Virus record (IMG/VR): IMGVR_UViG_3300043446_005562
Span: 1-64,000 of that record
Strand: one strand, 5' to 3'
DNA: 64,000 nucleotides
This document shows positions 9,672-29,389 of this stretch, piece by piece; positions within the stretch are counted from its first letter, which is position 1; each line of letters starts with the position of its first letter. Under the pieces are notes generated by a model that did not search any database, had not been told where the DNA came from, and saw only the letters and a program-made list of their open reading frames with translations. The position numbers and the translations under genes were made by a program.

Positions 9672-9748
9672 TTTCAGATTTATTTGGATTACAGAATACT
9701 ATACTCTACCGGTCAGATAGGTTTCAAGCAGCGGACCGGGCAGACTGC

Positions 9749-10881: not shown

Positions 10882-10940
10882 CCGGGCACCGGCCTAGTTA
10901 CCCCCGACGCGCCACCCCAAAAAAAAAAACCACGATAACA

Positions 10941-11162
10941 ATGAAAATCCAGAAAAATACCAAGGCTCCAACCGAGGCCCAGCTCATTGAGCTTGCAAAA
11001 CGCATGCTAGAGCTCTCCACCAAATTTCCCAACAACTACGACCTTGGCGAAAGGGTTCGCAGCCTTCACGAGCTTGCGGTTTCCAACCCCGATCTGCTGA
11101 TAAATAACCAGAAAGACCGCGACACAGATGAGTCGAATAAAACCATTCTTGGCCCACATTAA
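10941..11162 (+). CDS. hypothetical protein (73 aa)
   Basis: FPNNYDLGERVR motif seen in small phage proteins. Confidence 0.65.
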   Translation: MKIQKNTKAPTEAQLIELAKRMLELSTKFPNNYDLGERVRSLHELAVSNPDLLINNQKDRDTDESNKTILGPH

Positions 11163-11763: not shown

Positions 11764-11795
11764 TATAAATAATAAGACAAAAATATAAACAAAAA

Positions 11796-14996: not shown

Positions 14997-15659
14997 ATGA
15001 AAACTTTTAAAATCTGGTTAGTACTTCTAATCGTAATTATCCTGGGTACATCATTTTCGCTGGTTCAACTGCCGAAACCCCCGATCGTTATCCTAAAACA
15101 TGCCGGCTACGTATCTCACTATAATACAACCCTAAAATATCCGGTCGAGGTTGAGTGGTGGGCAACCAAATCTCGACTCGTATGTCCAGACACAAAGGTT
15201 CCACGAAAGGACGAGTTTGCACAGGATCCACTCTTACCCAATGAAACTGATTTAGCTGACGACTATAAAGGTTCAGGCTTTGATAGAGGCCACATGTGCC
15301 CGGCCGCCGACAACCAGTGTAATGCGGACTGGCAACGCGAGTGCTTTTATTTCTCAAATATGTCTCCACAGTATCATTCGCTAAATGCTGGAGTCTGGAA
15401 AACTCTTGAGGTTAGAACCAGAGAACTTGCCTCCCAACTAGACTCGGTTAGAGTTTGGTGCGGTAATGTGGGTAACGTTGCTAAAATTGGAGAGGTCGCA
15501 GTTCCTTCTAAATGTTGGAAAGTGATTTACATAAAGAAAACCAAAGTTTGGGAAGCCTATATCTTTGAGAACACAAAGGATCAAACAAAAAAGCTTGATC
15601 AGCTCGCGGTTAAGGTATCAGACGTTGAAAAATTAACCGGCTTTAAATTTAAACCATGA
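14997..15659 (+). CDS. DNA/RNA non-specific endonuclease (NucA/EndoG family) with N-terminal membrane/signal segment
   Basis: GFDRGHMCPAAD, FYFSNMSPQ, LNAGVWKTLE, VPSKCWKVI. Confidence 0.92.
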   Translation: MKTFKIWLVLLIVIILGTSFSLVQLPKPPIVILKHAGYVSHYNTTLKYPVEVEWWATKSRLVCPDTKVPRKDEFAQDPLLPNETDLADDYKGSGFDRGHMCPAADNQCNADWQRECFYFSNMSPQYHSLNAGVWKTLEVRTRELASQLDSVRVWCGNVGNVAKIGEVAVPSKCWKVIYIKKTKVWEAYIFENTKDQTKKLDQLAVKVSDVEKLTGFKFKP

Positions 15660-16063
15660 AACACCTAAAGCAGTTCTCACAATTCATAAGTGAATCACTA
15701 GATCACAATCAGCTCGTTGAGCTTGAAAAGTACGCGGACGGGCTGTTCAGCGAACTTGGCCTCGATGTAGTATTCACCAAACACTTTAAGGATAGAATCA
15801 ATGATGTTCGCAACGGCAAGCCAATAACCTATAACGAACTTAAAGTCCTCTTTCTAAAGGCATACCTAAATGCGGGCCAAAAAATATCCGAGCTTCCTGC
15901 TGAGACTGAAGCGGTACTAAAGGACTTAAGCTCAAATCTTAACGCCCCGTTCAAGATCCAGGGCGCACCCGATGATGCTGGCCACACCGAACACGACATG
16001 ATAATGAAGACTATTATGAAGAAATCGGGATTCATGTCGACCAACCCAGCGATCGTCGTTTAA
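15656..16063 (+). CDS. conserved T4-like phage protein, possible RelE/BECR-fold nuclease
   Basis: MKHLKQFSQFISE leader; DVVFTKHFKDRIND...IMKTIMKK. Confidence 0.6.
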   Translation: MKHLKQFSQFISESLDHNQLVELEKYADGLFSELGLDVVFTKHFKDRINDVRNGKPITYNELKVLFLKAYLNAGQKISELPAETEAVLKDLSSNLNAPFKIQGAPDDAGHTEHDMIMKTIMKKSGFMSTNPAIVV

Positions 16064-16135: not shown

Positions 16136-16702
16136 TTACATTTCGTTTTCAGTGTTTGCGCCCTTTTTCTGAAATCCAAAAGGCTTTGACTGCTTGGCAG
16201 CAGGTTTTTCTGCTTTTTTACCGAAAGGCATTCCTTTTGCAGCAGGTTTTTCTGCTTTTTTACCGAAAGGCATTTCTTTTGCAGCCGGCTTGGCTTTACC
16301 TCCTTTTTTAGGAGCCTCTTCCATCTCTTCCTCTTCTTCAGGCATTGCCTTCTTTTTACCAACCGGTTTTAGGTTAGCGAATTTTTTGTCAACCGCCTTA
16401 AGAGCTTCAATCTGAGCCTTTTTCTTTGCTTCATAAAGCTCATGTGGATCTAGGTGAATTTCCCTAGGCGGAGCGGCTAAATAATTATCAGGATCAGCTT
16501 TATGCTGTCTGTCGTAGTGAGAATATGAATCATCTTGATCAGCGTATTCGCCGCACTCTGTGCAATATCCATCAGTATCAATATCAGAATCACAGCATGG
16601 TGACTTCTCCATTGACATAGAGTCTTCCATGTCGCTTAAGTGATGATTATGCGAGTGATACTCATTAACGAAATCTGTAAATCTTTTTACTTGGTGTTTC
16701 AT
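16136..16702 (-). CDS. putative virion protein with CxxC motifs and a Lys/Pro/Ala-rich tail
   Basis: MKHQVKRFTDFVNE leader; CCDS..YCTECGE; KPAAKxMPFGKKAE repeats. Confidence 0.75.
   Translation of the reverse strand: MKHQVKRFTDFVNEYHSHNHHLSDMEDSMSMEKSPCCDSDIDTDGYCTECGEYADQDDSYSHYDRQHKADPDNYLAAPPREIHLDPHELYEAKKKAQIEALKAVDKKFANLKPVGKKKAMPEEEEEMEEAPKKGGKAKPAAKEMPFGKKAEKPAAKGMPFGKKAEKPAAKQSKPFGFQKKGANTENEM
16197..16284. repeat. 42-bp in-frame tandem repeat (two units plus partial)
   Basis: GCAGCAGGTTTTTCTGCTTTTTTACCGAAAGGCATT(C/T)CTTTT at 16197 and 16239. Confidence 0.9.
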
Positions 16703-16723: not shown

Positions 16724-17164
16724 TTAGGGTTCGATATCTTCATCCCCTTCAGCATTCTCAACGTCAGCTGAAAGACCCAGCATTTCGTCATTGAATTTAT
16801 TGAAAGCGGATTCAGCATCCTTCATTGTTTTATTAAGTGCAATAAGTTCATCCTTTAGGGTTTGAACCTTTTGCTTGTCCTCATCCGATGTAGGATTCTT
16901 ACGAGAGTCCTCAGGCATTTCTAAAAATTCCTTCTGCTTTTCTTTGAATGCTTTAACCGCATCCTTGCGAGCCTGATCTAATTTTTTAAATTTACCAATT
17001 TCGGTTGAATCATCGATTTCCTCAACGCTCTTTGGTTCTGTCTCGTCCATTTCAGCTGGAGGAGCCGGTGCGGCAGAAGGGTCAGCGGCTGGGGCGTCTA
17101 TTGCTGGAACAGTCGCGTCAACCTTTTCAGATTCTTCAAGCCATTGATTATACCTGTAAATCAT
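16724..17164 (-). CDS. acidic coiled-coil protein, possible prohead core component
   Basis: MIYRYNQWLEE leader; ATAAATA upstream. Confidence 0.7.
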   Translation of the reverse strand: MIYRYNQWLEESEKVDATVPAIDAPAADPSAAPAPPAEMDETEPKSVEEIDDSTEIGKFKKLDQARKDAVKAFKEKQKEFLEMPEDSRKNPTSDEDKQKVQTLKDELIALNKTMKDAESAFNKFNDEMLGLSADVENAEGDEDIEP

Positions 17165-17221: not shown

Positions 17222-17998
17222 ATGAAACTATTACAATTTAGTACGTGGTTGACTGAGAATTCCCGACCCCTAATCAAGTTAAGTGATTTGGACATTAACC
17301 GAAAGTATAAGCATGAAAGATACGAATATGAGCTCTTTCCAATGTTTAGAAGACTTAAGACCCGAATCAACGAACTTGATAAGATGCCGACTCTTGAGCA
17401 ATGGTTTGCGATGATGCAGAATTCGGATGCCCAGTTCTACACTCTTGTGCAGACTGCGCAGTTGGGTCAGCCAGACGTTAGGGAGCTCTTTAGGGACCTA
17501 ACCGGCCGACGTGCTGCAAAAATGGCAAAGTACAATCTGGAAGAGAGCGCCGATCAGGTTGCGGCATTTCAAAGCAAACTAGATCCTGCGTGGACCGTGA
17601 TTGTGCTGTGGCCGACTGACTCCGGCTATGCTGAACTCTCCAAAGTATTTGATCATCTGGGCATTGCATTCGGCGATCTGCTAAACCAGACAATATACGT
17701 CGATGGAGTTCAGCTTGAGGAGGCCAACCTAACACAGGATCACCTGCTTGCGATTGAGGCCCATGAAATTGCGCACGGCATTCTAGAGCACGCCTCATCC
17801 AATCGTGACTTTGCAGAATACGATGAACGTCAAGAACGTGAAGCTGACTGGTTAGGGATTAGAATTTTGGATGAACTCGGTCATCAGACCGCAGCCCAAA
17901 TCCTAGAAGATCGTTATCTGGATCACTATTCAGAAAGTTCAGAGGATCTGGTTGGGACTGAAAAATTAGAGTCTGCACTACAGAGATATTTTAAATAA
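17222..17998 (+). CDS. HExxH zinc metallopeptidase-like protein
   Basis: IEAHEIAHGILEH...EREADWLGIRIL; MKLLQFSTWLTE leader. Confidence 0.75.
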   Translation: MKLLQFSTWLTENSRPLIKLSDLDINRKYKHERYEYELFPMFRRLKTRINELDKMPTLEQWFAMMQNSDAQFYTLVQTAQLGQPDVRELFRDLTGRRAAKMAKYNLEESADQVAAFQSKLDPAWTVIVLWPTDSGYAELSKVFDHLGIAFGDLLNQTIYVDGVQLEEANLTQDHLLAIEAHEIAHGILEHASSNRDFAEYDERQEREADWLGIRILDELGHQTAAQILEDRYLDHYSESSEDLVGTEKLESALQRYFK

Positions 17999-18328: not shown

Positions 18329-19387
18329 ATGAAAACTTTTTCTCAATTCATAAATGAAAATTCTCAGCCTTCACATTACACTGATGTGATCTCTAAATTC
18401 GCGGATGGAATGCGTAGAGCAGGATATCACGCAGATATTTCGGTGGAACCTAATGGTTTAATTAAGATTGACTCTAATTGGGAACTTGATACAATGAAGA
18501 TTAGCGGACTTGGTCGAGTTGAGCCCAGCTCCTATTTTACGATGGTGCTGCAGCCCAACTTTACTAAACAGGCTCCAGAAAAGCTGACAAGACTGATTCA
18601 ATTGGGCTTAGGCACAGCTGCCTCTCTGCTTGAAGGATTTACAATAACGACCTCCTTACTCGTTGAAGTCTATGAGGTTGAGGGCTATGAATACGCTGAG
18701 GGTCCAGACACCGACTCTCATTCCCTAAAAGATTTGGGCATTGATCATTATTTTGAGAATGGAGACATTGAGGGAGCCGGTGAATCTTTCATGGAGTGGT
18801 GGGACGAAGCTGGCAATGAATACGCCTATATGCTCTACACCAGCGTTGCGGAAGATCTGGAAGAATACGTTGCAACTCATCAATCCGATGAAGACGATGA
18901 CGAAGAGGAAGAGGAGGAAGATGATGAAGACGATAATATGTTTGAATCATATCATGACAAGTTTAGACGGCTTCACCAATTAGGTCTTGCTGAACCTCAG
19001 ATTAACATTCAAACCCTGGATGGAGATGAAAGTTGGGCCGGCGATCAGGCCAGACAACTATCAATTGAAGCAAAAGAGTGGTCCGATTCAAAGGGCCGTC
19101 AAATTGTCAGAATCGAAGGTCAACTAGGTAGCGAAGTTGCAATGCTGTTAATTGAGTTAAGCGATGGCTCAATCATTCAACTTGATAACTTCTACCATAT
19201 TGGTCCTGGAAGTTCAGCTCGAGATTACTGCAGACTCTTCATTAAGTCAGAGCGTGGCGAATTTGATATTGATGTAAAGAAGGAAGGCCGCGAAGTATAC
19301 TCAGACGATGATCTGTGGATGTACATGCTTGAGCAAACTGGTTCAATCCTCAGATCCGTAATGACGATTGCTAAACCATATCTTTAA
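18329..19387 (+). CDS. two-module acidic putative virion internal protein
   Basis: MKTFSQFINE leader; poly-D/E linker; second leader-like NMFESYHDKFRRLHQLGL. Confidence 0.75.
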   Translation: MKTFSQFINENSQPSHYTDVISKFADGMRRAGYHADISVEPNGLIKIDSNWELDTMKISGLGRVEPSSYFTMVLQPNFTKQAPEKLTRLIQLGLGTAASLLEGFTITTSLLVEVYEVEGYEYAEGPDTDSHSLKDLGIDHYFENGDIEGAGESFMEWWDEAGNEYAYMLYTSVAEDLEEYVATHQSDEDDDEEEEEEDDEDDNMFESYHDKFRRLHQLGLAEPQINIQTLDGDESWAGDQARQLSIEAKEWSDSKGRQIVRIEGQLGSEVAMLLIELSDGSIIQLDNFYHIGPGSSARDYCRLFIKSERGEFDIDVKKEGREVYSDDDLWMYMLEQTGSILRSVMTIAKPYL

Positions 19388-19582
19388 TTAAACAGACGGA
19401 TTTCCCGTCATAGTTTCATAATATTCCCAAAGCTCTTGGCAGGTTTCATACTCCTCAAGATCCTCAAGCCATTTTATAACTATAAGTATTTCTGACCAAT
19501 AGGGAGAAGCAATTCCCCGTTTTTCTAAATCTTTACACTTCTTGCGCATCTCTGCGAATTCGCCGGCCTGATCCAATGGCAT
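19388..19582 (-). CDS. small protein with UVR-like motif
   Basis: WLEDLEEYETCQEL. Confidence 0.55.
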   Translation of the reverse strand: MPLDQAGEFAEMRKKCKDLEKRGIASPYWSEILIVIKWLEDLEEYETCQELWEYYETMTGNPSV

Positions 19583-20543
19583 TTAATTCCCCGTATTTTT
19601 GGCGAGGCTGTACCTCTATAGTATATTTAACGTCGAGGCCAATCGTTTGTCGTATGCACTCAATTAGATCCATTGTGTGTAGGCTCAATACTGAAGTATA
19701 ATCGTCATCTCGGTATCCGCCAAATAGCGCGCAAGATACGGGTAATGGTTTACCTAGAATTAGGTCCATTTCGCTGACCCAGCTCCAGAAAAAATTTGCG
19801 CATTTAACCCACCATTCAGTTGAACACTGATGTCCTAACTGATCGTCTTCGTGAGAGTCTGCGCCATGGCACCAGACAACATAGTCAATTTTACCAGATA
19901 GAATTGCGGGCTCAAGTTGAGTCTTGATAAAATTGACCAAATCTTGATAATATTCTTCGTTTGAAAATTTTGGATTAAAGTTGAAACCCGGCGGCACAGC
20001 TAAGTCCAGCTCAGGTTGAAAGGATCTGGTGTCTTCTATTGAATTACCGAAATGTCCGTCCAAATCTAAGTAACAGCCAACCTTGCCCAGTTCCCTCCAT
20101 ATTTTAACTGAGGCAATCGCCTGACCGCTAAACGTGCAAAAACCGCTACCTCCGCTTGGTCTTGCATGGTGAAAACCACTGGTTGGACTAAAGCTGATCT
20201 CAGCTGGATTTAGGATTGAGTTTTTAATTGCTGCATGCAAAGACGCGTTCGTATAGCGAACCGACTCCGCGAATTGATGATTCCAACTTAAACCGTTTGA
20301 CGAAGCTTTGGGCCCACCCTTAAAAAAGTCGTTGACGTATTTTTTAGTGTGTGCAACTAAAAAGTCAGAATTGCCAAAACGGTCAAAGACTTTAGTTATT
20401 TCAAAATGATCGAGTAAGCCCTTCTTGGCCAGATACTCGATCAAGAGCTTGGGCTTTAGAGGGGACTTACTGTAGTTTGAGTATGAGTCCTTCTCTAGCA
20501 CCTGCTTGGGATTGTAAAATGTCTTTATTTTTAAGCGTCTCAT
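19533..20543 (-). CDS. histone deacetylase family (Zn-dependent) deacetylase
   Basis: HTKKY, GFHHA, GFC, DLDGHFGN, GADSHEDDQLG, GGY all present; start set at ATG 20543. Confidence 0.9.
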   Translation of the reverse strand: MRRLKIKTFYNPKQVLEKDSYSNYSKSPLKPKLLIEYLAKKGLLDHFEITKVFDRFGNSDFLVAHTKKYVNDFFKGGPKASSNGLSWNHQFAESVRYTNASLHAAIKNSILNPAEISFSPTSGFHHARPSGGSGFCTFSGQAIASVKIWRELGKVGCYLDLDGHFGNSIEDTRSFQPELDLAVPPGFNFNPKFSNEEYYQDLVNFIKTQLEPAILSGKIDYVVWCHGADSHEDDQLGHQCSTEWWVKCANFFWSWVSEMDLILGKPLPVSCALFGGYRDDDYTSVLSLHTMDLIECIRQTIGLDVKYTIEVQPRQKYGELNAIGSGRRIRRDAQEV

Positions 20544-20559
20544 ACTCTTAATAATATAC

Positions 20560-20585
20560 AAAAAAAGTCGGCCAAATGGCCGACT
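20560..20585 (-). terminator. intrinsic terminator after hsp20 gene
   Basis: AGTCGGCC/GGCCGACT stem plus T-run on minus strand. Confidence 0.7.
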
Positions 20586-20612
20586 CTATGAGTAACCTGT
20601 TGGGAACAGTTT

Positions 20613-21029
20613 TTATTTTATTTTTAGGGTTTTTGGTTTGGCTTCCTCTGCGAAAGGTACGCAAATTTTCAGTAAACCGTTTTTCATCTCAGCCTCAGCG
20701 TTTTGCAGTGAAAATTTTGAGGCAATTTTATAACCCAAATTAAAGGATCGACGTGCAATCCCACGATGAATAAATTTGGTTTTCGGCTCTGAGCCTTCGT
20801 CTGGTTTTTCGTAAATTACTCTTAAAATATCGCCTTCGATTTGAATGTCGATATCGTCTTTGGCTAGACCAGTTCCAGCGATTTCAAGATGAAGACCCTT
20901 TGTGTCCTCATAAATATCGACAGGATGAGTGATTTTAGCTTCAACTACTGGGGCGAAGAATGAATCGCTGTTGAAGAAATTTTTGAATAAGAGATCAAAT
21001 GTCTCTAGATTTCTGGTTGTGTAAGTCAT
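20613..21029 (-). CDS. small heat shock protein (Hsp20/alpha-crystallin)
   Basis: PVDIYE, LEIAGTGLAKDDIDI, HRGIARRSF, AEMKNGLLKI. Confidence 0.93.
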   Translation of the reverse strand: MTYTTRNLETFDLLFKNFFNSDSFFAPVVEAKITHPVDIYEDTKGLHLEIAGTGLAKDDIDIQIEGDILRVIYEKPDEGSEPKTKFIHRGIARRSFNLGYKIASKFSLQNAEAEMKNGLLKICVPFAEEAKPKTLKIK

Positions 21030-21142
21030 AGTTCTTAAATCTATTTTTTTTGTGCTCCCGATTGGTGAGCGGTTTGGACCCTAAGGTTACTCAATAATTA
21101 ATACAACAAATTGTGTGCCAACCTTGATTTTATGACAAGATG

Positions 21143-21862
21143 TCACTTATTTAGAAAAATTGTGTCAAGATCGTGAAGCCAATCCCAAACATGAGATATT
21201 TCAACTGGGCCGGCCTGAACAGGCTGAACCGTACTATTTTTTGAAACAGCCTGTGTTATCTGCAAAGTAATTGCAGCTTGAGATAGGATGGTTGAAATTA
21301 TTTCGCTGAAAGTCCAGTTAATGACACACTCAAATTTTACAGAAGAGTCTTGAGAATCGACGATCTCCAACCAGTCATCTGCTAGAATAGGCAGATCACA
21401 CCAATTTTCAAAATTAATTTGAGAGAGTGGGTGCAACACGTCTGATTCCGGATCCTCTTCGTTAACTATCTCTAGGCCCATTAAAACTGGATAAATTGAC
21501 AGAAAATCGATCGCCTGATCATTTTGATTGATCTTTTTGAGATCTGCAATTTTAAGTAAAAAAACCTCCTTTGCCGCAATTTCTTGTTTGATAATTTTGG
21601 CCTGGTCAGCGATCATGAAAATTTCTTCAAGCTCAACCCCTCCCAGATTTTGCACAAAATAAAATTTCAAAGCCTCAGCATGAGGCTTTAACTGATCCAA
21701 TATTTCTCTAACTGTCATGCCCATTTCAATCTCAACTGCATAATTCATGAACCAAGTTATAGGTAAATTTGAGTCAGCCAGACTCTTTTCAATCCATTTT
21801 TCAGATTGGTCATCCCAGAATGAAATGTTAATGCCAGTTTTATTGATTGATACTTTTTGCAT
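21143..21862 (-). CDS. hypothetical protein (239 aa)
   Basis: Long ORF behind exact TATAAATA at 21868. Confidence 0.8.
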   Translation of the reverse strand: MQKVSINKTGINISFWDDQSEKWIEKSLADSNLPITWFMNYAVEIEMGMTVREILDQLKPHAEALKFYFVQNLGGVELEEIFMIADQAKIIKQEIAAKEVFLLKIADLKKINQNDQAIDFLSIYPVLMGLEIVNEEDPESDVLHPLSQINFENWCDLPILADDWLEIVDSQDSSVKFECVINWTFSEIISTILSQAAITLQITQAVSKNSTVQPVQAGPVEISHVWDWLHDLDTIFLNK

Positions 21863-21942
21863 ATAGTTATTTATAGTTTAGGTCTTTTACTTCATTTACT
21901 GGTAAGGATCTAACGAATAAATAACCAAAAGAATCTAATTTA

Positions 21943-23937
21943 ATGATTAATTCATTTATACAAATGGTTAACGAGTCAGCTGATCAAGCTCTTGGTCAAG
22001 ACGGGCTGGTTGACGAAATGGGCATAAAAAGACCAGAAAGACTTTCTGGAAGCCAAATGGGTCCAATAAGACAGTCTTCAGTAGACAGGGCTCGTCAATT
22101 ACAGGGTCAGCCGAGGCCCAAAACCTATTTTGAACTTGCAACCGAGCTGGTGCAGAAATTCAAAGAGATTAAATCAACCGATATCTCAATGTTTCAGACA
22201 AGCTCAAGCGAAAGAACCTACTATCCAAAATTTGACGCACAGGTCCGAGAACTTTTAAACAAGACCAGACAGGCTGCGCCGAGCGAAGATAAATTTATTG
22301 CGGATTTTGGTAAATGGAGAGATCTATTTAATTCATCAAGCGCTATTCACTTCAACATTGATTCACCATCCGCCTGGCAACGAAGCCATTTTCCAAATGA
22401 CGGAATTCCAAAAGGCTTGCGAGGCATTGGCTTGGGATATAAACTATATCGTGCTCTGCTTAGACACGTTGGCTATATTTCTTCAAATAGATCGGGAACA
22501 GATGAAAAGGACAAGGCTTGGGGTTCTCTACTTGATCAAAAATTAAATGCTGACGGCTCTGTTTCGGTTGATGATGCACACGCAATCATTGGCCCAGCGA
22601 ATTGGATGGCAATCGATAAGCAATTTCAAGAGAATAAAAAGATTGAGGTTGCGGAAAGTTTCATATCAAATCAAATTGGTCTGAACCGTACTCAGCCTGA
22701 CCGTTTTGACATTGATGATGAACTGCTTGCAATTTTACCAAACGACTTTTTAGTTAAATTAGATCCAGCCTATTTACAATCTCTAGTTAATGATGATCGC
22801 TTAACCGAAAGAAGATTCAACGAAATTGAAAATTCAAGAAGTGAAGCCGATCGCCGTGAAAGAGAGCGTCAAGCTCAAGCCGAGCGCGAGGCTCGTGAAC
22901 GTCGAACCAGGGAAGAGGCCGAGACACGTCGAAGACTTGCAACCAGAATTCAACAGTACGGTGCCGATCCGGATGCAGAGTGGAATGTTGGCGACTTTAT
23001 TGTTGTTAAGGCATACCTGTTTGATGCATCGTATTCAGGTCTTCCTATTCGTCAAGTAGTTACGCGAAGAAACGATGGCTCCTACGTTGCTGTCAAAATA
23101 TCTGAGGCAATTGCGATTGCACAAGGCACACTAAGATTTCAGGACGCTAGGGATACTAGAACAACTTCTCAAAAGGAGACCTGGGTAAAGGTTAATATTG
23201 AAGATATTCCGGATCTTTCTCGAGTTAATTTAGACCCGGCCGAAAGAGCCTTCATTGAGCTTCAAATGAATCCGGAAGCAGCCGAGCGCGCACGAACTCA
23301 ACGTGAGACGGCTGACCGCGAAAGACGCGAAGCTGAACGTCGTGAAAACGAAGAGCGCGCTAGAAATAGAGAAACATTCGGTGAGGTGCCTGAAAACGGT
23401 GATACTCTTAAGCGTTTACAGGCAGCCAGAAATAATGGTTCGAACGCGAATTCAGGTATTTTGAAGATGTTTAGAGACTCTTATTTCATCAATAGAATGC
23501 AGATTATTGTGCTGGGACCTCAACAGAGAGAGTCTCTACGAAATTCATTTGGAGTACCAGTATTCATTCCATGGACAGGGTCTTCAAGACGTCCAACTCC
23601 TGCTACTCTTGAAATGTTAAACACTGACCCACAATCGGTTAAATTGACCGATGCTGTGACCGGCTTTACAATCGATGCCCCGTTTACTGGATTGGGTCTA
23701 ACCGCATATCCGCTAAGCGAAGTAACAGTTGATGATAAATTAAGAGCGCGCGCGGGAACGCATTACTACATCGCAGGCCATAAGAATGCATTTGGTATTC
23801 TTGCAAAAAGCGATTACGGTACAGTTAATACCTCTTCTCAAAAATTTATTTACGTAAAAGCATACGGTTACGGAGAACGTAGCGTATCGGTTCGACTTGA
23901 TCTACTCAGAAAGCTCGGAGAGCCTACTGAAATCTAA
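21943..23937 (+). CDS. large putative virion protein with GNAT acetyltransferase-like domain and charged coiled coils
   Basis: IPKGLRGIGLGYKLYRALL (acetyl-CoA-binding motif A); MINSFIQMVNE leader; late promoter. Confidence 0.65.
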   Translation: MINSFIQMVNESADQALGQDGLVDEMGIKRPERLSGSQMGPIRQSSVDRARQLQGQPRPKTYFELATELVQKFKEIKSTDISMFQTSSSERTYYPKFDAQVRELLNKTRQAAPSEDKFIADFGKWRDLFNSSSAIHFNIDSPSAWQRSHFPNDGIPKGLRGIGLGYKLYRALLRHVGYISSNRSGTDEKDKAWGSLLDQKLNADGSVSVDDAHAIIGPANWMAIDKQFQENKKIEVAESFISNQIGLNRTQPDRFDIDDELLAILPNDFLVKLDPAYLQSLVNDDRLTERRFNEIENSRSEADRRERERQAQAEREARERRTREEAETRRRLATRIQQYGADPDAEWNVGDFIVVKAYLFDASYSGLPIRQVVTRRNDGSYVAVKISEAIAIAQGTLRFQDARDTRTTSQKETWVKVNIEDIPDLSRVNLDPAERAFIELQMNPEAAERARTQRETADRERREAERRENEERARNRETFGEVPENGDTLKRLQAARNNGSNANSGILKMFRDSYFINRMQIIVLGPQQRESLRNSFGVPVFIPWTGSSRRPTPATLEMLNTDPQSVKLTDAVTGFTIDAPFTGLGLTAYPLSEVTVDDKLRARAGTHYYIAGHKNAFGILAKSDYGTVNTSSQKFIYVKAYGYGERSVSVRLDLLRKLGEPTEI

Positions 23938-24702
23938 TTACTTGGCTGAGGTCTGCTCAGCGACTGGATGCATTTCATAAAATTTAGCAAGTCTCTCTCT
24001 AAATTTAAAATAGTATTCCTTCATTTCCGCTGATGTCATTGTGAAGTGTTGCGGCTTGTCGTCCACTTCATTTGAAATCCAAATCTGACAACGCGTTGTT
24101 TTTATCTGCATTCTATCCCAAACTGCAACAGAATAGGCTGCAACCTGGTGCTTATAATCTTCAATCCACTTTTCGTCCTTTGGCTTGCGAGCAGTTTTAA
24201 AATCAACAATCGCGTAGTCGTCTGTGATCAATTGAGAAACATTATCGACAGTGCCGGCATATCCGCCGTCCCTTGGCGTCCATAGAAAACGCTCTTGTGC
24301 AATAACCTTTTTAATCTCATCAAACGACCTGGATTTAATGAAATTATAGAATAGGGTTCCGCCTACTATTTTTGCTCTATTATCAAATTTTTCAATTTCA
24401 TCGTCCAGTCTTGATAGAGATAGAGTTTCCTCCAATCTGTCCTTTGCGCTTAATGATGCTGGCAAATTAAGATAAATTTCGCAAAGTCGATGCATCACAG
24501 TTCCACGATTAGCAGCGTCCTTGCCAATTTGATCTGCTTTCTGATGACCAACTCTGTCTCGCCAGGCATTCAAACCAGCCTTGTCTGATGTCTCTCCGAG
24601 GACAGTTGTCACACTAGGAAAGGTTCCAATTATATGAGTATCATTGCTGACCTGATAATACCTGAAGCCATTAATTTCAACTCTTTTTATTTTCTCGTTC
24701 AT
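23938..24702 (-). CDS. PD-(D/E)XK exonuclease (Cas4/MGME1-like phage family)
   Basis: FPSVTTVL, RGTVMHRLCE, GYAGTVD, IVDFKT, QVAAY. Confidence 0.9.
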   Translation of the reverse strand: MNEKIKRVEINGFRYYQVSNDTHIIGTFPSVTTVLGETSDKAGLNAWRDRVGHQKADQIGKDAANRGTVMHRLCEIYLNLPASLSAKDRLEETLSLSRLDDEIEKFDNRAKIVGGTLFYNFIKSRSFDEIKKVIAQERFLWTPRDGGYAGTVDNVSQLITDDYAIVDFKTARKPKDEKWIEDYKHQVAAYSVAVWDRMQIKTTRCQIWISNEVDDKPQHFTMTSAEMKEYYFKFRERLAKFYEMHPVAEQTSAK

Positions 24703-24757: not shown

Positions 24758-25132
24758 ATGTTTAAGAAATTTGATGAATTTAATGAAACCTTGAATGAAG
24801 GTTTTTGGGACTGGCTGACCGGCAAATCCGAAAAGGGAGAAAAGAAGGAAAAGTCAACGAGCGCAAAAGAGGGTCCAATCGATTCACAAGTTGAAGCCTA
24901 CTACAAAACGCTGCAAGATTTTGCGGACTCAAATAAATCAATTGAGGTCCAAGCGGCCGGTAGTATGGAATATTCTAAGCTGGTTGAAGACATTCAGCTT
25001 GCGCTGGAATTTTTGGGTTATAAACTTACTAAATACGGAGTCGATGGTTATTTTGGACCAGAAACGGCCGAAGCAATCGTTAAATTTAATGAGGACACCC
25101 TAAAGAAAATACCCGATAGCCAACATGATTAA
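24758..25132 (+). CDS. peptidoglycan-binding domain protein
   Basis: IQLALEFLGY...GVDGYFGPETAEAI; MFKKFDEFNETLNE leader. Confidence 0.8.
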   Translation: MFKKFDEFNETLNEGFWDWLTGKSEKGEKKEKSTSAKEGPIDSQVEAYYKTLQDFADSNKSIEVQAAGSMEYSKLVEDIQLALEFLGYKLTKYGVDGYFGPETAEAIVKFNEDTLKKIPDSQHD

Positions 25133-26372
25133 AGGATTCGACCAATTTGCTGGAAAATTAAATGAGGCAGCCAACGGTAAATTGAATACTGATGATTTGG
25201 TTGCAATTCAACCGTTAGGCAAAAGCGGCGGCAATCATAAATTGAATGCGGAGGCCGCAAAAGCCTATGAAGAAATGAAAGCCGCTGCTGAAGCGGACGG
25301 AATTACCTGGGGAATAACTGATTCCTATCGAGATTATGAAGCCCAAGTTAGTGTTGCTGCACGTAAGGGTCTTTATAAAAATGGCGGACTTGCTGCAGTA
25401 CCCGGAACTTCAAATCACGGTTGGGGTAGCGCGCTAGATCTCAAATTAGATTCAGACGCCCAAGACTGGTTAAAGAAAAACGCTTCAAAATTTGGATTCT
25501 CAACCATTCCCAGAGAGCCTTGGCACTGGGAACACAAAGCAAGCGTAGATTCAGCAAAGGGCGGAAAGGAAGGAACCGATTCATCAGCTAAGGTTGGAGC
25601 AGTTTTAATAGACTCTGATTTAATTAAGCGGTTAATTTCCAAATTAAAGGAAAAGGGTTTTAGCCAAAAGGACCTTGATAAAAAATCCGACCTGCAACCG
25701 GGTAAGGGTGCAAAATTCAAAGGAGGCGGAGGCTTTCCAGCTGAGAACATGAAGGCTCTTGAAAAGGCAATGGACGATCACGGTATAACAAATGAGTACG
25801 CAAGAAAAGCAATTCTTGGAGTTATTTCAAAAGAGTCTCCAAACCTTGCGTCTGAGATAAGCTATTCAACAACAAGTCCTTCCAGAATTAGAGAAGTATT
25901 TCCAAGTAAGTTCGGCAGCATGTCGGACGAAGAGATCAATGATATTAAAAAGGACGATTCTAAATTTTGGGATATTGTTTACGGTGGAAAATACGGTAAT
26001 ACTGAGCCGGGCGATGGTTCAAAATACCGAGGCCGTGGTTTTAACGGTATAACTTTTAAATCAAATTACGAAAATTTACAGAGAATATACGAAAGAGAGG
26101 GTTCTAGACTTGGATCAATTGATATTGTTAAAAATCCTGAGCTACTTGAAAAACCTGAAGTTGCCGCAGAATTCGCGGTTCTGTTTTTTCTAGATTCATT
26201 CAAGCGCAAGGGTAAAAATCCAAACGATTATTCGGACCTTGAATCTGCCGTAACTGATTACGTTCAATCAAATGCAGGTTGGGGTACTTCCCTTGCGGGA
26301 GCAGTCACCTCATCCGGCCTGCAAAAGGCAATGGCATTCGCTCAAACTCTATCTAAAACTCAAACTGCTTAA
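25125..26372 (+). CDS. bifunctional cell-wall hydrolase: M15B (VanY-like) peptidase plus GH19-like lysozyme
   Basis: SYRDYEAQ, AVPGTSNHGWGSALD, EPWHWE; YGGKYGNTEPGDGSKYRGRGFNGIT. Confidence 0.88.
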   Translation: MIKGFDQFAGKLNEAANGKLNTDDLVAIQPLGKSGGNHKLNAEAAKAYEEMKAAAEADGITWGITDSYRDYEAQVSVAARKGLYKNGGLAAVPGTSNHGWGSALDLKLDSDAQDWLKKNASKFGFSTIPREPWHWEHKASVDSAKGGKEGTDSSAKVGAVLIDSDLIKRLISKLKEKGFSQKDLDKKSDLQPGKGAKFKGGGGFPAENMKALEKAMDDHGITNEYARKAILGVISKESPNLASEISYSTTSPSRIREVFPSKFGSMSDEEINDIKKDDSKFWDIVYGGKYGNTEPGDGSKYRGRGFNGITFKSNYENLQRIYEREGSRLGSIDIVKNPELLEKPEVAAEFAVLFFLDSFKRKGKNPNDYSDLESAVTDYVQSNAGWGTSLAGAVTSSGLQKAMAFAQTLSKTQTA

Positions 26373-26373
26373 T

Positions 26374-27288
26374 ATGAAATATTTAATAGAATATCGGCTA
26401 TTCGAATCAGCTGAGGCAATTCTTAAAGCCACTGCCGGTTTTGGCACTGATGAAGAGGCCCTAGTCAAAGCAATCATTGAAATTCAATCGGCTGACGAGC
26501 TTGCAAAAATTGACGCTGAACTTGCTGCAAACGGTTCGGCTGAATACAAAAGCGTGAAGGCGGCAGTTGATGGAGAGCTTGGAATATTCGATAGAGTTTA
26601 CAAGCAAATGATCTCTAAAAAATTTGAAGAGCTTGGACTAACTAGCTATTTGAAAGACGGAATAATTCCGGCGCAGGTTAAAAAATCTCAAGCTGAACCG
26701 GTTAAGAGCCAGTCGACCACCTCTGGTGAAACTAAAAAGCTTTCACAAGGTAAAGTTTCAATCAATTCAAATAAGAGTGCTCCCCTAATCGTTGTATTTG
26801 GAGGAATTGATGTTGGTGGTCGAACCAGCGGAGACTACATGTACGATTATTTCAAAGAGGATACTCTTGGCAAAACCACAACATTTGTTGCAAATTCTTC
26901 AAGGATAGATGGAGTTAAGGCATGGGACGAGATTTCTCAATTGGGTCTCTCGCCATCTAAAAAGATTCTTTACCTGTTCTCAGGTGGATATTTACCAGGT
27001 ATGAGTCTTTTGGCCAAGGTGCCCGCTGAGAATTGGGATAAAATTTATCTAGTTGATATCTGGATCGGTAACAATCAAAATACGCAAAAGATCTATACTG
27101 AACTTGCCGAAGCTCATCCCGATAAAGTCAAATACTATTACACAGGTGGAGAGAATGGAGCCGGCGGCTCAAATAATTTAACAGCTAAAAAAGAGATAAT
27201 TGCTGCAGTAAAAGATTCAAAGGCTGCAAGCTCTCACATGGGTGCAAATGATATTGCGGTAACTGATCTTAAATCTGATATTGCCTAA
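26374..27288 (+). CDS. annexin-like repeat fused to alpha/beta-hydrolase-like domain
   Basis: AILKATAGFGTDEEALVKAII...DGELG; LIVVFGG, YLFSGG, LVD, H; start moved to ATG 26374. Confidence 0.7.
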   Translation: MKYLIEYRLFESAEAILKATAGFGTDEEALVKAIIEIQSADELAKIDAELAANGSAEYKSVKAAVDGELGIFDRVYKQMISKKFEELGLTSYLKDGIIPAQVKKSQAEPVKSQSTTSGETKKLSQGKVSINSNKSAPLIVVFGGIDVGGRTSGDYMYDYFKEDTLGKTTTFVANSSRIDGVKAWDEISQLGLSPSKKILYLFSGGYLPGMSLLAKVPAENWDKIYLVDIWIGNNQNTQKIYTELAEAHPDKVKYYYTGGENGAGGSNNLTAKKEIIAAVKDSKAASSHMGANDIAVTDLKSDIA

Positions 27289-27929
27289 ACTTCTTTACCG
27301 GATTTATCTGATCCAAATTTGGATAGAAAAATATCAGCAGTTGTTTCAAGAACTTTATTGAAGGCTGTGTCCTTTGCTGCTCTAATCTCCTTAAAGTAGT
27401 CAACAAATCCTACCATATCGCTAATTCGATAAGTGTTCATCTTAACTCGATCAGACGAATTTCCATCGATTGAGTTGAAAGTTCCGTTGGAGTTGACCTT
27501 TAGTACAATACCGGTATGACCCTTGCCTGAAGAAATTCCACCCCTTGATTTGATGAAAATTTGACCTGGTTGAACTTGTGATGGATCAAACTTTGAAGAG
27601 TTCACGGTGATTTTGTTTTCGGGGTCAGCCTGTGACCAGTGAACCATGACCCCAGCCGTCTTGGGTAGAGGATTTGATATTCCAAGATTTGAACAAAGCT
27701 CATCAAATACTGAGTAGACAAATGCCATACACCAGGGATTACCTACGCCTAAGCCCAATTTACCAAGAAATTTCTTGACCATTGGCCCGGCATTATTACC
27801 TTCTTCTTTTTTACCAACATAGTCAGCAAGCACATGGCCGAATGTTTCTGCAGCCTTGGTAGCGCTATCTGGTTGTATTGCCAAGTCGGATTCGTTTAGG
27901 AATCCTTTAAAATCCTTGATGAATTTCAT
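27285..27929 (-). CDS. CHAP-domain amidase/peptidase
   Basis: GNPWCMAFV, GHTGIV, SIDGNS; MKFIKDFKGFLNE leader. Confidence 0.88.
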   Translation of the reverse strand: MKFIKDFKGFLNESDLAIQPDSATKAAETFGHVLADYVGKKEEGNNAGPMVKKFLGKLGLGVGNPWCMAFVYSVFDELCSNLGISNPLPKTAGVMVHWSQADPENKITVNSSKFDPSQVQPGQIFIKSRGGISSGKGHTGIVLKVNSNGTFNSIDGNSSDRVKMNTYRISDMVGFVDYFKEIRAAKDTAFNKVLETTADIFLSKFGSDKSGKEV

Positions 27930-28183: not shown

Positions 28184-29389
28184 TTAATTACTTAGTGGGG
28201 CTTTAATTGTTGGGTGTGATTGATAATCTCTAATCTCAAAATCAGATATCTCAATATGTTCTATTTGTTCAATTAAACCAACATCAGGGTTCCAAAACTC
28301 ATCGTTAATAACTAATTTCGGTAACTTGAAAGGCTCTCTGGTTCTATACGGTATTTTATAACTAGCGTAGTACTCAGATAGCCCTCCGCCAAATGGCATT
28401 AGCTCGCTAACTGCAGTCGAATACGCATCTTCGCCCATTGCTTCCTTTAACAATTGGGCTCTTTCGTCAGGTGAATAGTATCTTCCTAACTGTTCTTCTA
28501 CTGCGTCTGCGTGGTTCAAATAGAGATGAGTGTCTCCAAGATTGCCAATCAATTGATCAGGAACCATATTAACTGCTTTGGCAATGATTTCAAGTAGTAA
28601 ACCATAAGAAGCAATGTTAAATGGTAAACCTAAGAATGTATCTACTGAACGTTGATTCCACATTAAAGAGATTGCTCTGGTTGGGATATTAAGTTTATCA
28701 CACTCTTTCATAAATTCTTTCATTTTAGTCTTTCCATCTCCGTAGTCTAAAAAGAAAAGAGGCCTATTAGTTAATTCAACTAATTTAACATACCTTTCAT
28801 TTTCACTCAACTCTCTTGTATAAACTTGAAATCCATAATGACAAGGTGGGAGTACCATTTGGTCTAATTCACCTACATTCCAAGCTGAAACCATTAGTCG
28901 TCTTGAGTCTGGATTTGTTTTAAGGTCGTTGATTAGGTTTTGGATTTGGTCTATTGGGTTGGTTAAATAATCTGATGGGTAAGTTGACCAACTTCTCCAT
29001 TGCTTACCATAAATTGGTCCTAGATCACCCCATTCCTCAGCAAACGCTTTATCCATTTTAATCCATTGGATAAATTCTGCTTGTGGCATTCCTTTATAAT
29101 CTGCATTTTGTAGGTAATTCTTATAAGCATCACCATTCCAAATATTACAACCATTATCAACTAAATACTTGATATTAGTATCACCTCTTAAGAACCATAG
29201 TAGCTCAATTACGATTGACTTCCAGTGCATTTTCTTTGTTGTAAGCAAAGGAAACCCATCTTTCATGTTGTGACGGATCGTATATCCAAATATTGACCGT
29301 GTGCCGGTTCCTGTGCGATCCTTTTTTACCACTCCATACTCATTAATTGCATGAAGTAGGTCAATGTACTGCTTATCGAGAGTGTTCAT
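28184..29389 (-). CDS. thyA: thymidylate synthase with two insertions
   Basis: DRTGTGT, FPLLTTK, ELLWFLRG, LGPIYGKQW, LPPCH, QRSVD..LGLPFNIASY. Confidence 0.97.
   Translation of the reverse strand: MNTLDKQYIDLLHAINEYGVVKKDRTGTGTRSIFGYTIRHNMKDGFPLLTTKKMHWKSIVIELLWFLRGDTNIKYLVDNGCNIWNGDAYKNYLQNADYKGMPQAEFIQWIKMDKAFAEEWGDLGPIYGKQWRSWSTYPSDYLTNPIDQIQNLINDLKTNPDSRRLMVSAWNVGELDQMVLPPCHYGFQVYTRELSENERYVKLVELTNRPLFFLDYGDGKTKMKEFMKECDKLNIPTRAISLMWNQRSVDTFLGLPFNIASYGLLLEIIAKAVNMVPDQLIGNLGDTHLYLNHADAVEEQLGRYYSPDERAQLLKEAMGEDAYSTAVSELMPFGGGLSEYYASYKIPYRTREPFKLPKLVINDEFWNPDVGLIEQIEHIEISDFEIRDYQSHPTIKAPLSN

What the first reader, a model, noticed from the sequence alone, without database searches (positions are those of the whole stretch)
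19533..23937. Phage-encoded acetylation writer/eraser pair (GNAT-like plus HDAC-family)
Seen: a deacetylase with all metal and catalytic motifs, and 1.4 kb away a 664-aa leader-bearing protein with GNAT motif A. Known: HDAC-family enzymes remove acetyl groups from lysines or polyamines, T4 injects a protein-modifying enzyme (Alt), and some toxin GNATs acetylate tRNA. Inference: the phage may inject an acetyltransferase to reprogramme host machinery and later reverse it, or use the deacetylase against acetylation-based defence.
Basis: partly seen in the sequence, partly recalled or inferred. Interest (0 to 1): 0.7.

Follow-up and report, generated by a model that had tools for sequence, protein, structure and literature searches.

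The report
Packaged GNAT-like protein beside phage deacylase
A 253-kb freshwater jumbo phage encodes an intact HDAC11-type zinc deacylase and, 1.4 kb away, a 664-residue protein with a T4-style capsid-targeting leader and a very divergent GNAT-like domain, but nothing shows that the two act as a writer/eraser pair.

Summary
Both objects are real. ORF 19533-20543(-) is an HDAC-family enzyme (Pfam PF00850, 3.7e-18). Its His-His dyad, Asp/His/Asp metal ligands and GGY tyrosine are invariant in 26 homologs. Its nearest solved relatives are class IV/HDAC11-type fatty-acyl deacylases, not acetylpolyamine amidohydrolases.

ORF 21943-23937(+) has no Pfam or PHROG match. Residues 58-292 fold confidently (pLDDT 91.5). 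Every structure library returns GNAT acetyltransferases as nearest neighbours, but weakly (best Z 5.3; one significant Foldseek hit, E 1.8e-4). An invariant R-G-x-G-x-G loop lies where GNAT motif A lies.

The N-terminus fits a T4-type capsid-targeting propeptide. The only two family-wide (L/I/V/M)-x-E sites are at residues 11 and 25. The genome has a gp23-type capsid protein and a gp21-type prohead protease, and a late-promoter-like ATAAATAA sits 18 nt upstream. So "packaged, probably ejected acyltransferase" is a reasonable inference.

The pairing is not supported. The genes lie on opposite strands in separate transcription units. They are neighbours only within one syntenic clade. Complete phages carry the deacylase without the GNAT-like family. 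The deacylase looks like a fatty-acyl rather than an acetyl eraser. Verdict: partly supported; a new variant of known kinds.

The parts
19533..20543 (-). Class IV (HDAC11/VcHdaH-like) Zn-dependent deacylase, 336 aa from ATG 20543. The mechanical ORF extends to TTG 20561. No capsid-targeting leader.
   Evidence: Pfam PF00850 3.7e-18. Best PDB matches are VcHdaH 9GKV at 1.3e-11, then 9RJE and 9RJD/9GZ5. Catalytic residues are invariant and the start is fixed by alignment A4. More than 1070 homologs.
20564..20587 (-). Intrinsic-terminator-like hairpin (10-bp stem, 6 G-C pairs, T-run) between Hsp20 and the deacylase gene.
   Evidence: Metatranscriptome contigs over Hsp20 stop at 20603-20630 and none bridges into the deacylase gene.
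20613..21029 (-). Hsp20/alpha-crystallin gene, an insertion specific to this phage.
   Evidence: Pfam HSP20 4.8e-11 and PHROG 432. Absent from all 31 related loci. Highest depth in 4 RNA libraries.
21143..21862 (-). Conserved acidic 239-aa protein of unknown function, divergently transcribed from the 664-aa gene.
   Evidence: Adjacent in 28 of 31 related loci. No Pfam, PHROG, PADLOC or Atlas match.
21867..21874 (-). ATAAATAA late-promoter-like motif, 4 nt upstream of the 239-aa gene.
21917..21924 (+). ATAAATAA late-promoter-like motif, 18 nt upstream of the 664-aa gene.
   Evidence: 68 copies in the genome against about 29 expected. 49 lie within 60 nt upstream of a same-strand ORF start, including the sheath and protease/scaffold genes. 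Enriched before leader-bearing ORFs, p 9e-5.
21943..23937 (+). 664-aa multidomain protein: propeptide, GNAT-like domain, ER/K helix, SH3/KOW/Tudor-like barrel, ER/K helix, C-terminal beta-rich domain.
   Evidence: Translation. At least 144 full-length homologs. AF2 model pLDDT 82.9.
21943..22017 (+). Propeptide-like leader, residues 1-25, with candidate prohead-protease sites after E11 (V-N-E|S) and E25 (V-D-E|M).
   Evidence: E11, S12, E25, M26 and G27 are invariant. These are the only two (L/I/V/M)-x-E sites conserved across the family. pLDDT is below 50 for residues 1-26. T4 CTS rules are from PMC9026906.
22114..22818 (+). GNAT-like domain, residues 58-292 (fold core about 75-230).
   Evidence: Domain model pLDDT 91.5, pTM 0.88. 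All 50 top rows of the PDB second look are GNAT-superfamily entries, best Z 5.3 for RimL. BFVD NAT_SF protein E 1.8e-4. ESM Atlas rows 4-10 are GNAT clusters. Named AFDB hits are GNAT.
22381..22458 (+). Conserved core, residues 147-172: R-S-H-F-P, then G-I-P-x-x-L-R-G-x-G-L-G-x-K-L-Y-R-x-L. This is a motif-A-like pyrophosphate loop between a beta strand and a helix.
   Evidence: Invariant columns. The only hhalign match to a canonical GNAT family lands here, but is not significant (E 0.038). Secondary structure.
22975..23202 (+). SH3/KOW/Tudor-like beta-barrel, residues about 345-420, flanked by ER/K-rich single helices (289-331 and 444-474).
   Evidence: Weak matches only: KOW, MBT, CarD, Mfd and TraI domains at Z 3.5-4.3.
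23491..23922 (+). C-terminal beta-rich domain, residues about 517-660, tandem-Tudor/SAWADEE-like.
   Evidence: Weak matches at Z 3.9-4.4. pLDDT about 88-92.
23938..24702 (-). PD-(D/E)XK (Cas4-like) nuclease, convergent with the 664-aa gene. The most conserved gene of the block.
   Evidence: Pfam PDDEXK_1 1.4e-6. PADLOC Cas4 1.1e-4. Present in 29 of 31 loci at 62-96% identity.

Best explanation
There are two separate accessory functions that are neighbours by synteny.

(1) The 664-aa protein is made late. A T4-CTS-like N-terminal propeptide directs it into the prohead. The phage's gp21-type protease trims it after E11 and/or E25. It is carried in the head and probably ejected with the DNA, as T4 Alt and the internal proteins are. 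Its N-terminal domain is a very divergent GNAT-fold enzyme that keeps the acyl-CoA pyrophosphate-binding loop. On that basis it most likely transfers an acyl group from acyl-CoA to a host target at the start of infection. The ER/K helices and SH3/Tudor-like barrels would serve as spacers and target-binding modules.

(2) The deacylase is an intact class IV (HDAC11/VcHdaH-like) zinc hydrolase without a leader. It is made inside the infected cell from its own transcription unit. It most likely removes medium- or long-chain acyl groups, or hydrolyses a small-molecule amide, rather than acting as a dedicated deacetylase.

Shown: the ORFs, the motifs, the predicted folds, the genomic distribution, and the capsid and protease types. 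Inferred: packaging, cleavage, ejection, catalysis and substrates.
For: Deacylase:
- Pfam PF00850. All catalytic residues are invariant.
- The three best PDB matches are class IV enzymes. They are identified in PMC11532494 (VcHdaH, a de-decanoylase) and PMC13325672 (HDAC11 clades).
- A Phe before the His-His dyad is invariant.
- No APAH or class II entry appears among the 53 PDB hits at E <= 1e-3.

GNAT-like domain:
- Confident model.
- GNATs dominate every structural search: about 33 of the top 50 in the PDB-wide VIA search, all 50 rows of the second look with best Z 5.3, a BFVD NAT_SF protein at E 1.8e-4, Atlas GNAT clusters with TM by row up to 0.67, and AFDB hits with probability up to 0.94.
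- The R160-G161-x-G163-x-G165 loop and R147-S148-H149 are invariant. They persist in distant members of a family of 238 clusters.

Packaging:
- The leader is enriched at N-termini.
- Only two conserved (L/I/V/M)-x-E sites exist, both N-terminal and in a low-confidence segment.
- Gp23-type MCP at 1.5e-40 and an S77/S80 protease.
- A late-type motif lies upstream.
- Precedents: T4 rules (PMC9026906); the Rac GNAT and injected polyvalent GNATs (PMC7824862).

Independence of the two genes.
Against: - No sequence-profile method places the 664-aa protein in the GNAT superfamily.
- Structural scores are below the usual confidence level: Z below 8, and TM by query at most 0.43 for GNAT rows.
- The structure is a prediction.
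- No virion proteome exists, so packaging and cleavage are untested.
- A leader of about 11 residues is a short pattern.
- The deacylase's acyl preference is read from one gatekeeper position and from nearest neighbours at only about 25-30% identity.
- The two genes are adjacent in 24 of 31 relatives, so a functional link cannot be excluded.
Confidence: 0.5

Rival explanations
1. True writer/eraser pair. The ejected GNAT-like enzyme acylates a host protein at the start of infection. The phage-expressed deacylase later removes the same mark, or protects phage proteins from it.
For: The two genes lie within 1-3 kb of each other in 24 of 31 related loci. The 664-aa gene looks late and packaged, and the deacylase gene lacks the late motif, so the timing is feasible. 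Both genes appear in river RNA libraries.
Against: The genes are on opposite strands with separate units and a terminator. Adjacency does not exceed that of the other genes in the syntenic block. The deacylase occurs without the GNAT-like family in complete 482-kb and 95-kb phages, and 50 kb away from it in a megaphage. The deacylase family (more than 1070 clusters) is far wider than the 664-aa family.
Confidence: 0.12
2. The 664-aa protein is a non-catalytic head-core, scaffold-associated or DNA-binding internal protein. The GNAT-like fold is a relic used for binding only.
For: It has long ER/K-rich helices and several small beta-barrels, as elongated structural proteins do. No GNAT sequence profile matches it. 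Structural scores are weak.
Against: A block of polar residues is invariant around the putative cofactor loop and the adjacent strands: R147, S148, H149, R160, K167, Y169, Y178, S181. They stay conserved across 31 homologs down to 39% identity and in distant family members. That pattern is typical of an active site.
Confidence: 0.2
3. The deacylase is an acetylpolyamine amidohydrolase. It frees spermidine or putrescine for packaging a 253-kb genome and is unrelated to the 664-aa protein.
For: HDAC-fold APAHs exist, and giant viruses encode active ones. Phages encode spermidine acetyltransferases (PMC9992855).
Against: No APAH or HDAC10-type entry is among the PDB hits at E <= 1e-3. The nearest relatives are class IV enzymes. 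That study found viral APAH homologs only in Imitervirales.
Confidence: 0.1
4. The GNAT-like domain modifies nucleic acid rather than protein, like Mom (adenine acylation) or NAT10/TmcA (cytidine acetylation).
For: Phage Mu Mom (8bv8, Z 4.4, 120 aligned residues) and the Kre33/NAT10 GNAT domain (5wlc_LY, Z 4.6, 155 aligned) are among the longest structural alignments. Tudor/KOW-like barrels can bind nucleic acids.
Against: Their scores are no better than those of protein and small-molecule GNATs. [quoted passage not shown]
Confidence: 0.08

Closest known systems
T4 Alt and internal proteins IPI-III (capsid-targeted, gp21-processed, ejected proteins)
   Same: A short N-terminal propeptide with hydrophobic or aromatic residues three apart, followed by (I/V/L)-x-E. 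The genome has a gp23-type capsid protein and a gp21-type protease. A late-type promoter motif is present. An enzyme rides in the head.
   Different: The cargo is a GNAT-like domain, not an ADP-ribosyltransferase. There are two candidate cleavage sites (E11, E25). Packaging, cleavage and ejection are inferred, not measured. About 19-28 ORFs of this phage carry the leader, far more than in T4.
Phage GNATs that modify host machinery (phiKMV-like Rac; GNAT modules of injected polyvalent proteins)
   Same: A phage-encoded GNAT-fold enzyme proposed to act on host proteins early in infection, possibly delivered with the DNA (PMC7824862).
   Different: There is no detectable sequence-profile relationship to the Pfam GNAT families. 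The domain has extra N- and C-terminal helices and is fused to ER/K helices and SH3/Tudor-like barrels. It is a separate family of 238 clusters at 50% identity.
Class IV HDACs: human HDAC11, Vibrio cholerae HdaH (cluster 5b)
   Same: Best sequence matches. About 310-340 aa single-domain size. The (S/G)-G-(F/Y)-H-H and G-G-Y motifs. An aromatic foot-pocket gatekeeper.
   Different: A phage-borne family with its own invariant blocks (S-K-S-P-x-K-P near the N-terminus; F-G-N-S-I-E-D after the metal site). Only about 25-30% identity to solved enzymes. The substrate is unknown.
Viral acetylpolyamine amidohydrolases of Imitervirales and phage SpeG-like spermidine acetyltransferases
   Same: A precedent for viruses carrying an HDAC-fold amidohydrolase and GNATs that act on the same class of small molecule (PMC9992855).
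   Different: The phage deacylase is not APAH-like by sequence. The GNAT-like protein is a 664-aa leader-bearing multidomain protein, not a SpeG-like enzyme.

Membership tests
GNAT superfamily | Mixed alpha/beta GNAT fold (beta1-alpha1-alpha2-beta2-4-alpha3-beta5-alpha4-beta6/7) | tested here: met
   The predicted domain (pLDDT 91.5) aligns over about 100 of 150-180 residues to GNATs. All 50 top rows of the PDB second look are GNAT-superfamily entries, best Z 5.3. BFVD NAT_SF protein E 1.8e-4, TM by target 0.55. Atlas and AFDB neighbours are GNATs. Scores are weak and the model is a prediction.
GNAT superfamily | Motif A, Q/R-x-x-G-x-G/A, in the beta4-alpha3 loop (pyrophosphate binding) | tested here: met
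   R160-G161-I-G163-L-G165 lies directly before helix 164-176. R160, G161 and G165 are invariant; G163 is present in 28 of 31.
GNAT superfamily | Recognition by sequence profiles of the clan (Pfam Acetyltransf_*) | tested here: not met
   No Pfam hit for the protein. Acetyltransf_CG matches 3 of 31 homologs, best E 0.16. PF00583 finds nothing in the genome. hhalign against a canonical phage GNAT family gives probability 1.35%. One JGI name 'RimI-like' exists for homolog P0107.
GNAT superfamily | Acyl-CoA binding and acyl transfer | not testable with these tools
   The complex-prediction job with CoA was not folded and gives no evidence.
Classical Zn-dependent HDAC/deacylase family (PF00850) | Domain match above the curated threshold | tested here: met
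   66.3 bits against a cut-off of 27.9. 53 PDB relatives.
Classical Zn-dependent HDAC/deacylase family (PF00850) | His-His dyad, Asp-His-Asp metal ligands, catalytic Tyr in G-G-Y | tested here: met
   H131, H132, D168, H170, D235 and Y283 (numbering from the TTG start) are invariant in 26 homologs and align to VcHdaH.
Class IV HDAC (HDAC11 / bacterial cluster 5) | Closest relatives are class IV; aromatic foot-pocket gatekeeper before the His-His dyad | tested here: inconclusive
   The top three PDB sequences are VcHdaH 5b and two HDAC11 homologs. F130 is invariant. No phylogeny with clades A and B was built and no foot pocket was modelled.
T4-type capsid-targeted, protease-processed head proteins | N-terminal propeptide ending in (L/I)-x-E, in a phage with a gp21-type protease and a gp23-type capsid | tested here: met
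   V-N-E11|S and V-D-E25|M are invariant and are the only conserved sites of this kind. PF03420/PF20034 protease and PF07068 MCP. The rule is from PMC9026906. Val replaces Leu/Ile at P3.
T4-type capsid-targeted, protease-processed head proteins | Presence in the virion with a processed N-terminus; ejection into the host | not testable with these tools
   The phage is known only from metagenomes.
Writer/eraser pair (functionally coupled genes) | Co-occurrence beyond shared synteny, or co-transcription | tested here: not met
   26 of 75 deacylase loci have the partner, and all are close relatives. Complete genomes G007 and G010 lack it. Opposite strands and a terminator.
Writer/eraser pair (functionally coupled genes) | Same substrate and same acyl group | not testable with these tools
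   This needs biochemistry.

The most novel reading that the evidence does not exclude
The phage runs a lysine fatty-acylation switch. An ejected, highly divergent GNAT-fold N-acyltransferase is guided by its SH3/Tudor-like (CarD/Mfd-RID-like) barrels to a host protein such as RNA polymerase, and marks it with a medium-chain acyl group on entry. The class IV deacylase expressed from the genome later erases or confines that mark. This would be a bacterial-virus counterpart of eukaryotic acyl-lysine signalling.
Probability: 0.06. Interest if true: 0.85.

Novelty: new variant of a known kind. Interest (0 to 1): 0.5.

Why it matters
If packaging and activity are confirmed, this would be a large uncharacterised family of head-delivered acyltransferases: 238 clusters at 50% identity, in jumbo and megaphages with T4-type capsids. 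That would extend the Alt paradigm (ADP-ribosylation) to acylation. It would also supply a ready set of natural capsid-targeting leaders outside the T-even phages.

The deacylase defines a phage-borne branch of the poorly understood class IV HDACs, with more than 1000 members at 90% clustering, including phages of 480-735 kb. Its substrate could show what acyl marks or amides matter during infection of freshwater hosts, which are probably Bacteroidota.

Showing that the two are not an obligate pair keeps a tidy but unsupported 'epigenetic-style' story out of the record.

Tried and rejected
- blastn of the region against 50,697 phage records: no match.
- PHROGs for both proteins: nothing.
- PADLOC for seven neighbourhood proteins: only a weak Cas4-like hit on the nuclease.
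- PDB profile search with the full-length family: only low-complexity ER-rich matches, E > 2.
- Foldseek with the full 664-aa model against PDB and AFDB: no GNAT, only weak KOW/Tudor-like hits to the C-terminal half. Folding the domain alone was needed.
- ESM Atlas feature search for the domain and for the 239-aa neighbour: no usable hit.
- Pfam scan of 66 distant family members: no GNAT model matched.
- hhalign of the domain family against a canonical phage GNAT family: a 21-column match at motif A only, not significant.
- Complex prediction of the domain with CoA: not folded, no verdict. It is not evidence either way.
- Metatranscriptome contigs from four river RNA libraries cover parts of all five genes at low depth, highest over Hsp20. 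There is no strand or time information, and DNA carry-over cannot be excluded, so this gives only weak support for transcription.
- Considered and rejected: the deacylase as a packaged protein. It has no leader, and its N-terminus is the first strand of the HDAC fold.
- Considered and rejected: the TTG at 20561 as the start.

Full report
**Context.** The window is the first 64 kb of a 252,618-bp IMG/VR virus record, 93% complete by CheckV. It has no nucleotide match in 50,697 deposited phage genomes. It is a myovirus-type jumbo phage with a T4-type head module:
- a Gp23-family major capsid protein (Pfam 1.5e-40);
- a prohead protease matching Peptidase_S77 (T4 gp21) and S80;
- a sheath C-terminal domain match below Pfam's cut-off (19.7 against 26.9 bits) and a baseplate-spike OB-domain match just below its cut-off (23.0 against 23.8 bits).

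The capsid protein is closest to metagenomic huge phages and to the Prevotella Lak megaphages at 31-37% identity. The same sequence occurs in freshwater, reservoir, estuary and river samples.

**The deacylase.** The ORF at 19533-20561(-) matches Pfam Hist_deacetyl at 3.7e-18, 66 bits against a cut-off of 27.9.
- In an alignment with 25 homologs of 52-94% identity, all canonical residues are invariant: the His-His dyad (S-G-F-H-H), the D-L-D-G-H metal site, the G-A-D-S-H aspartate and the G-G-Y tyrosine.
- The same alignment puts the true start at ATG 20543. The TTG at 20561 lies in the T-tail of a strong terminator-like hairpin at 20587-20564 that follows the Hsp20 gene.
- The three best solved relatives are all class IV enzymes. 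They are Vibrio cholerae HdaH (9GKV/9GKY, 1.3e-11), a lysine de-decanoylase of bacterial cluster 5b, and two HDAC11 homologs (9RJE; 9RJD/9GZ5) (PMC11532494; PMC13325672).
- No acetylpolyamine amidohydrolase and no class II enzyme appears among the 53 PDB sequences matched at E <= 0.001.
- The residue before the His-His dyad is an invariant Phe. In class IV enzymes an aromatic residue there is the foot-pocket gatekeeper of the active, fatty-acyl-preferring clade B. Mapping the phage residue onto that position is my inference from the motif.
- The family is large, with more than 1070 clusters at 90% identity, almost all from metagenomes. It reaches phages of 480-735 kb. Among cultured phages there are only weak matches (28-30% identity, partial) in two actinobacterial phages, Rhodococcus phage E3 and Microbacterium phage Magritte.
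- The protein has no leader. Its N-terminus is the first strand of the fold.

**The 664-aa protein: sequence searches.** ORF 21943-23937(+) has no Pfam or PHROG match. It has at least 144 full-length homologs down to 39% identity, all unnamed. The exceptions are one JGI label, 'RimI-like', and one MAG labelled Bacilli. A profile of the family finds nothing in the PDB by sequence.

**The 664-aa protein: predicted architecture.** AlphaFold2 with 31 sequences gives pLDDT 82.9. The parts are:
- a low-confidence N-terminus (residues 1-26);
- an alpha/beta domain;
- a long ER/K-rich helix (289-331);
- a small beta-barrel (about 345-420);
- a second ER/K helix (444-474);
- a beta-rich C-terminal domain (about 517-660).

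The C-terminal parts give only weak KOW/SH3/Tudor-like matches.

**Is it a GNAT?** Folded alone, residues 58-292 give pLDDT 91.5 and pTM 0.88. No single match is strong, but every library gives the same answer.
- PDB-wide VIA search: about 33 of the top 50 are GNATs, Z 3.9-4.7, about 100 aligned residues covering whole GNAT domains.
- Second look at Foldseek's candidates: all 50 rows are GNAT-superfamily entries, best RimL at Z 5.3.
- Foldseek on PDB: the top of the list is GNATs, but E >= 0.087.
- AFDB clusters: the named hits are GNATs, E from 0.03, probability up to 0.94.
- ESM Atlas: rows 4-10 are GNAT clusters, and a 121-aa viral GNAT reaches TM 0.67 by target.
- BFVD: one significant hit, a 144-aa 'NAT_SF domain' phage protein at E 1.8e-4, probability 1.00, TM 0.55 by target.

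In the model, R160-G161-I-G163-L-G165 lies between a strand and helix 164-176, which is where GNAT motif A binds the CoA pyrophosphate. R160, G161, G165, K167 and Y169, together with the preceding strand R147-S148-H149-F150-P151, are invariant. They persist in distant members of a domain family of 238 clusters at 50% identity.

Against this, Pfam GNAT models do not see the family. hhalign against a canonical phage GNAT family aligns only 21 columns. Those columns fall exactly on motif A, but at probability 1.35%.

I therefore treat it as a GNAT-fold derivative (about 0.8) and as an active acyl-CoA-dependent transferase with less confidence (about 0.5).

**The leader.** Many ORFs of this genome begin M-K-x-x-x-F-x-x-F-(I/V/L)-(N/S/T)-E-(S/N).
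- A loose pattern matches 19 of 242 ORF starts against 16 of 1167 internal Met positions (p 4.6e-7). A strict pattern matches 7 against 1.
- In T4, the first 10 residues of IPIII are the capsid-targeting sequence. Residues 4 and 7 matter for targeting and residues 8 and 10 for processing. gp21 cuts after L/I-x-E (PMC9026906).
- The phage's leaders have the same spacing. One example is M-K-T-F-S-Q-F-I-N-E at ORF 18329.
- The 664-aa protein is shifted by one residue: F5, M/L8, V9, E11.
- Across 31 homologs, the only two conserved (L/I/V/M)-x-E sites in all 664 residues are at E11 and E25. E11-S12 and E25-M26-G27 are invariant. Both lie in the low-confidence N-terminal segment.
- Distant family members keep an (I/V)-K-E-M-G-I motif near their N-termini.

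**Promoter motif.** An octamer ATAAATAA, close to T4's late TATAAATA (the T4 consensus is quoted from memory), occurs 68 times against about 29 expected.
- 49 copies lie within 60 nt upstream of a same-strand ORF start. These include the sheath, the protease/scaffold and several large tail genes.
- It sits 18 nt before the 664-aa gene and is enriched before leader-bearing ORFs: 11 of 19 against 35 of 223, p 9e-5.
- None precedes the deacylase gene.

Together these observations support late expression, head targeting and trimming. All of that remains inference without a virion proteome.

**Are the two genes a pair?** They face away from each other.
- The leftward set is the 239-aa unknown, Hsp20 and the deacylase. 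A terminator interrupts it directly upstream of the deacylase gene.
- RNA-library contigs from four river samples cover Hsp20 as a discrete block (about 20603-21072) and never bridge into the deacylase gene.
- Hsp20 is unique to this phage, absent from all 31 related loci.
- Among 31 viral loci with a homolog of the 664-aa protein, 24 have the deacylase 1-3 kb upstream. The same block also keeps the 239-aa gene (28), the PD-(D/E)XK nuclease (29), an M78-like protein (27) and PG-binding and VanY genes (24-25). This is therefore plain synteny.
- Three of the loci without an adjacent deacylase carry one about 10-30 kb away.
- From the deacylase side, 26 of 75 viral loci have the partner within 10 kb, and all 26 have at least 60% deacylase identity. 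The 11 loci at 46-53% identity and all the more distant ones (25-31% identity) do not.
- Complete genomes of 482 kb and 95 kb carry the deacylase but no member of the GNAT-like family. A 289-kb genome has two distant members far from the deacylase. In the 636-kb megaphage LR756504 the two lie 50 kb apart.

So co-occurrence does not exceed shared ancestry. The likely acyl preference of the deacylase also weakens an acetyl writer/eraser reading.

**Comparison with what is known.** Head-delivered host-modifying enzymes (T4 Alt), phage GNATs acting on host RNA polymerase (Rac) and GNAT modules in injected polyvalent proteins are all described. HDAC-fold amidohydrolases are known in giant eukaryotic viruses, and SpeG-like acetyltransferases in phages.

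Three things are new here:
- a very divergent GNAT-like family attached to a T4-type leader;
- the scale of leader use in this phage, which includes CHAP, VanY and PG-binding proteins;
- a phage-borne branch of class IV deacylases.

I classify the finding as a new variant of known kinds. It is of moderate interest, and the 'pair' claim is unsupported.

Noticed in passing
window 15656-16063, 16136-16702, 16724-17164, 17222-17998, 18329-19387, 24758-25132, 25125-26372, 27285-27929, 31198-32265, 33131-33586, 43191-44342; also G000 176204-176659, 179032-179637, 226110-227396 and others: About 19-28 ORFs start with a T4-CTS-like leader, M-K-x-x-x-F-x-x-F-(I/V/L)-N-E-(S/N). Several are cell-wall enzymes: CHAP peptidase, VanY/M15 carboxypeptidase and a PG-binding protein. 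This suggests an unusually large set of head-packaged and ejected proteins. Enrichment against internal Met is p 4.6e-7.
   Followed up: partly
genome-wide, e.g. window 21917-21924(+), 21867-21874(-), 27950(-), 44387(-), 44434(+): The octamer ATAAATAA occurs 68 times against about 29 expected. 49 copies lie within 60 nt upstream of same-strand ORF starts, mostly 17-25 nt away, including the sheath, protease/scaffold and tail genes. It is a candidate late promoter resembling T4's TATAAATA.
   Followed up: partly
window 20613-21029(-): The Hsp20/alpha-crystallin gene is absent from all 31 related phage loci and has its own terminator. It is the best-covered part of the region in four river RNA libraries. 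Contig ends cluster at about 21051-21072 and 20603-20630, as expected for a monocistronic message.
   Followed up: partly
window 28184-29389(-): The thymidylate-synthase homolog has 401 aa, and its Pfam match is split into two stretches (residues 6-307 on profile positions 1-228). It is much longer than usual. It may carry an insertion or be a pyrimidine hydroxymethylase-type enzyme, which would hint at modified DNA.
   Followed up: no
window 11796-12581 and 12606-14390 (+): Two adjacent ORFs share a nearly identical N-terminus, M-K-H-(T/S)-I-I-K-D-F-K-G-W-N-R-L. The first continues into an A/G/T-rich low-complexity stretch. They are probably paralogous leader-bearing proteins.
   Followed up: no
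window 23938-24702(-): The PD-(D/E)XK (Cas4-like) nuclease is the most conserved gene of the block. It is 96% identical in a relative whose neighbouring genes are 55-89% identical.
   Followed up: no
window 2581-3300(-): A 239-aa ORF whose N-terminal text looks like sigma-70 region 2. It may be a phage sigma factor. This comes from reading the sequence only.
   Followed up: no
window 8000-12000: G+C rises to 0.50 here, against about 0.40 for most of the window.
   Followed up: no
G000 75657-84089 and 84122-91666 (-), outside the window: Two giant ORFs of 2810 and 2514 aa lie next to other large tail-fibre-like genes.
   Followed up: no
L215/L221-type homologs (proteins P0215, P0218, P0221): Some phage deacylase homologs carry a Fibrobacter-type PF09603 domain. 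In alignment A4 it appears as a C-terminal extension, not an N-terminal one. This hints at Fibrobacterota/Bacteroidota-type hosts or surface targeting.
   Followed up: no
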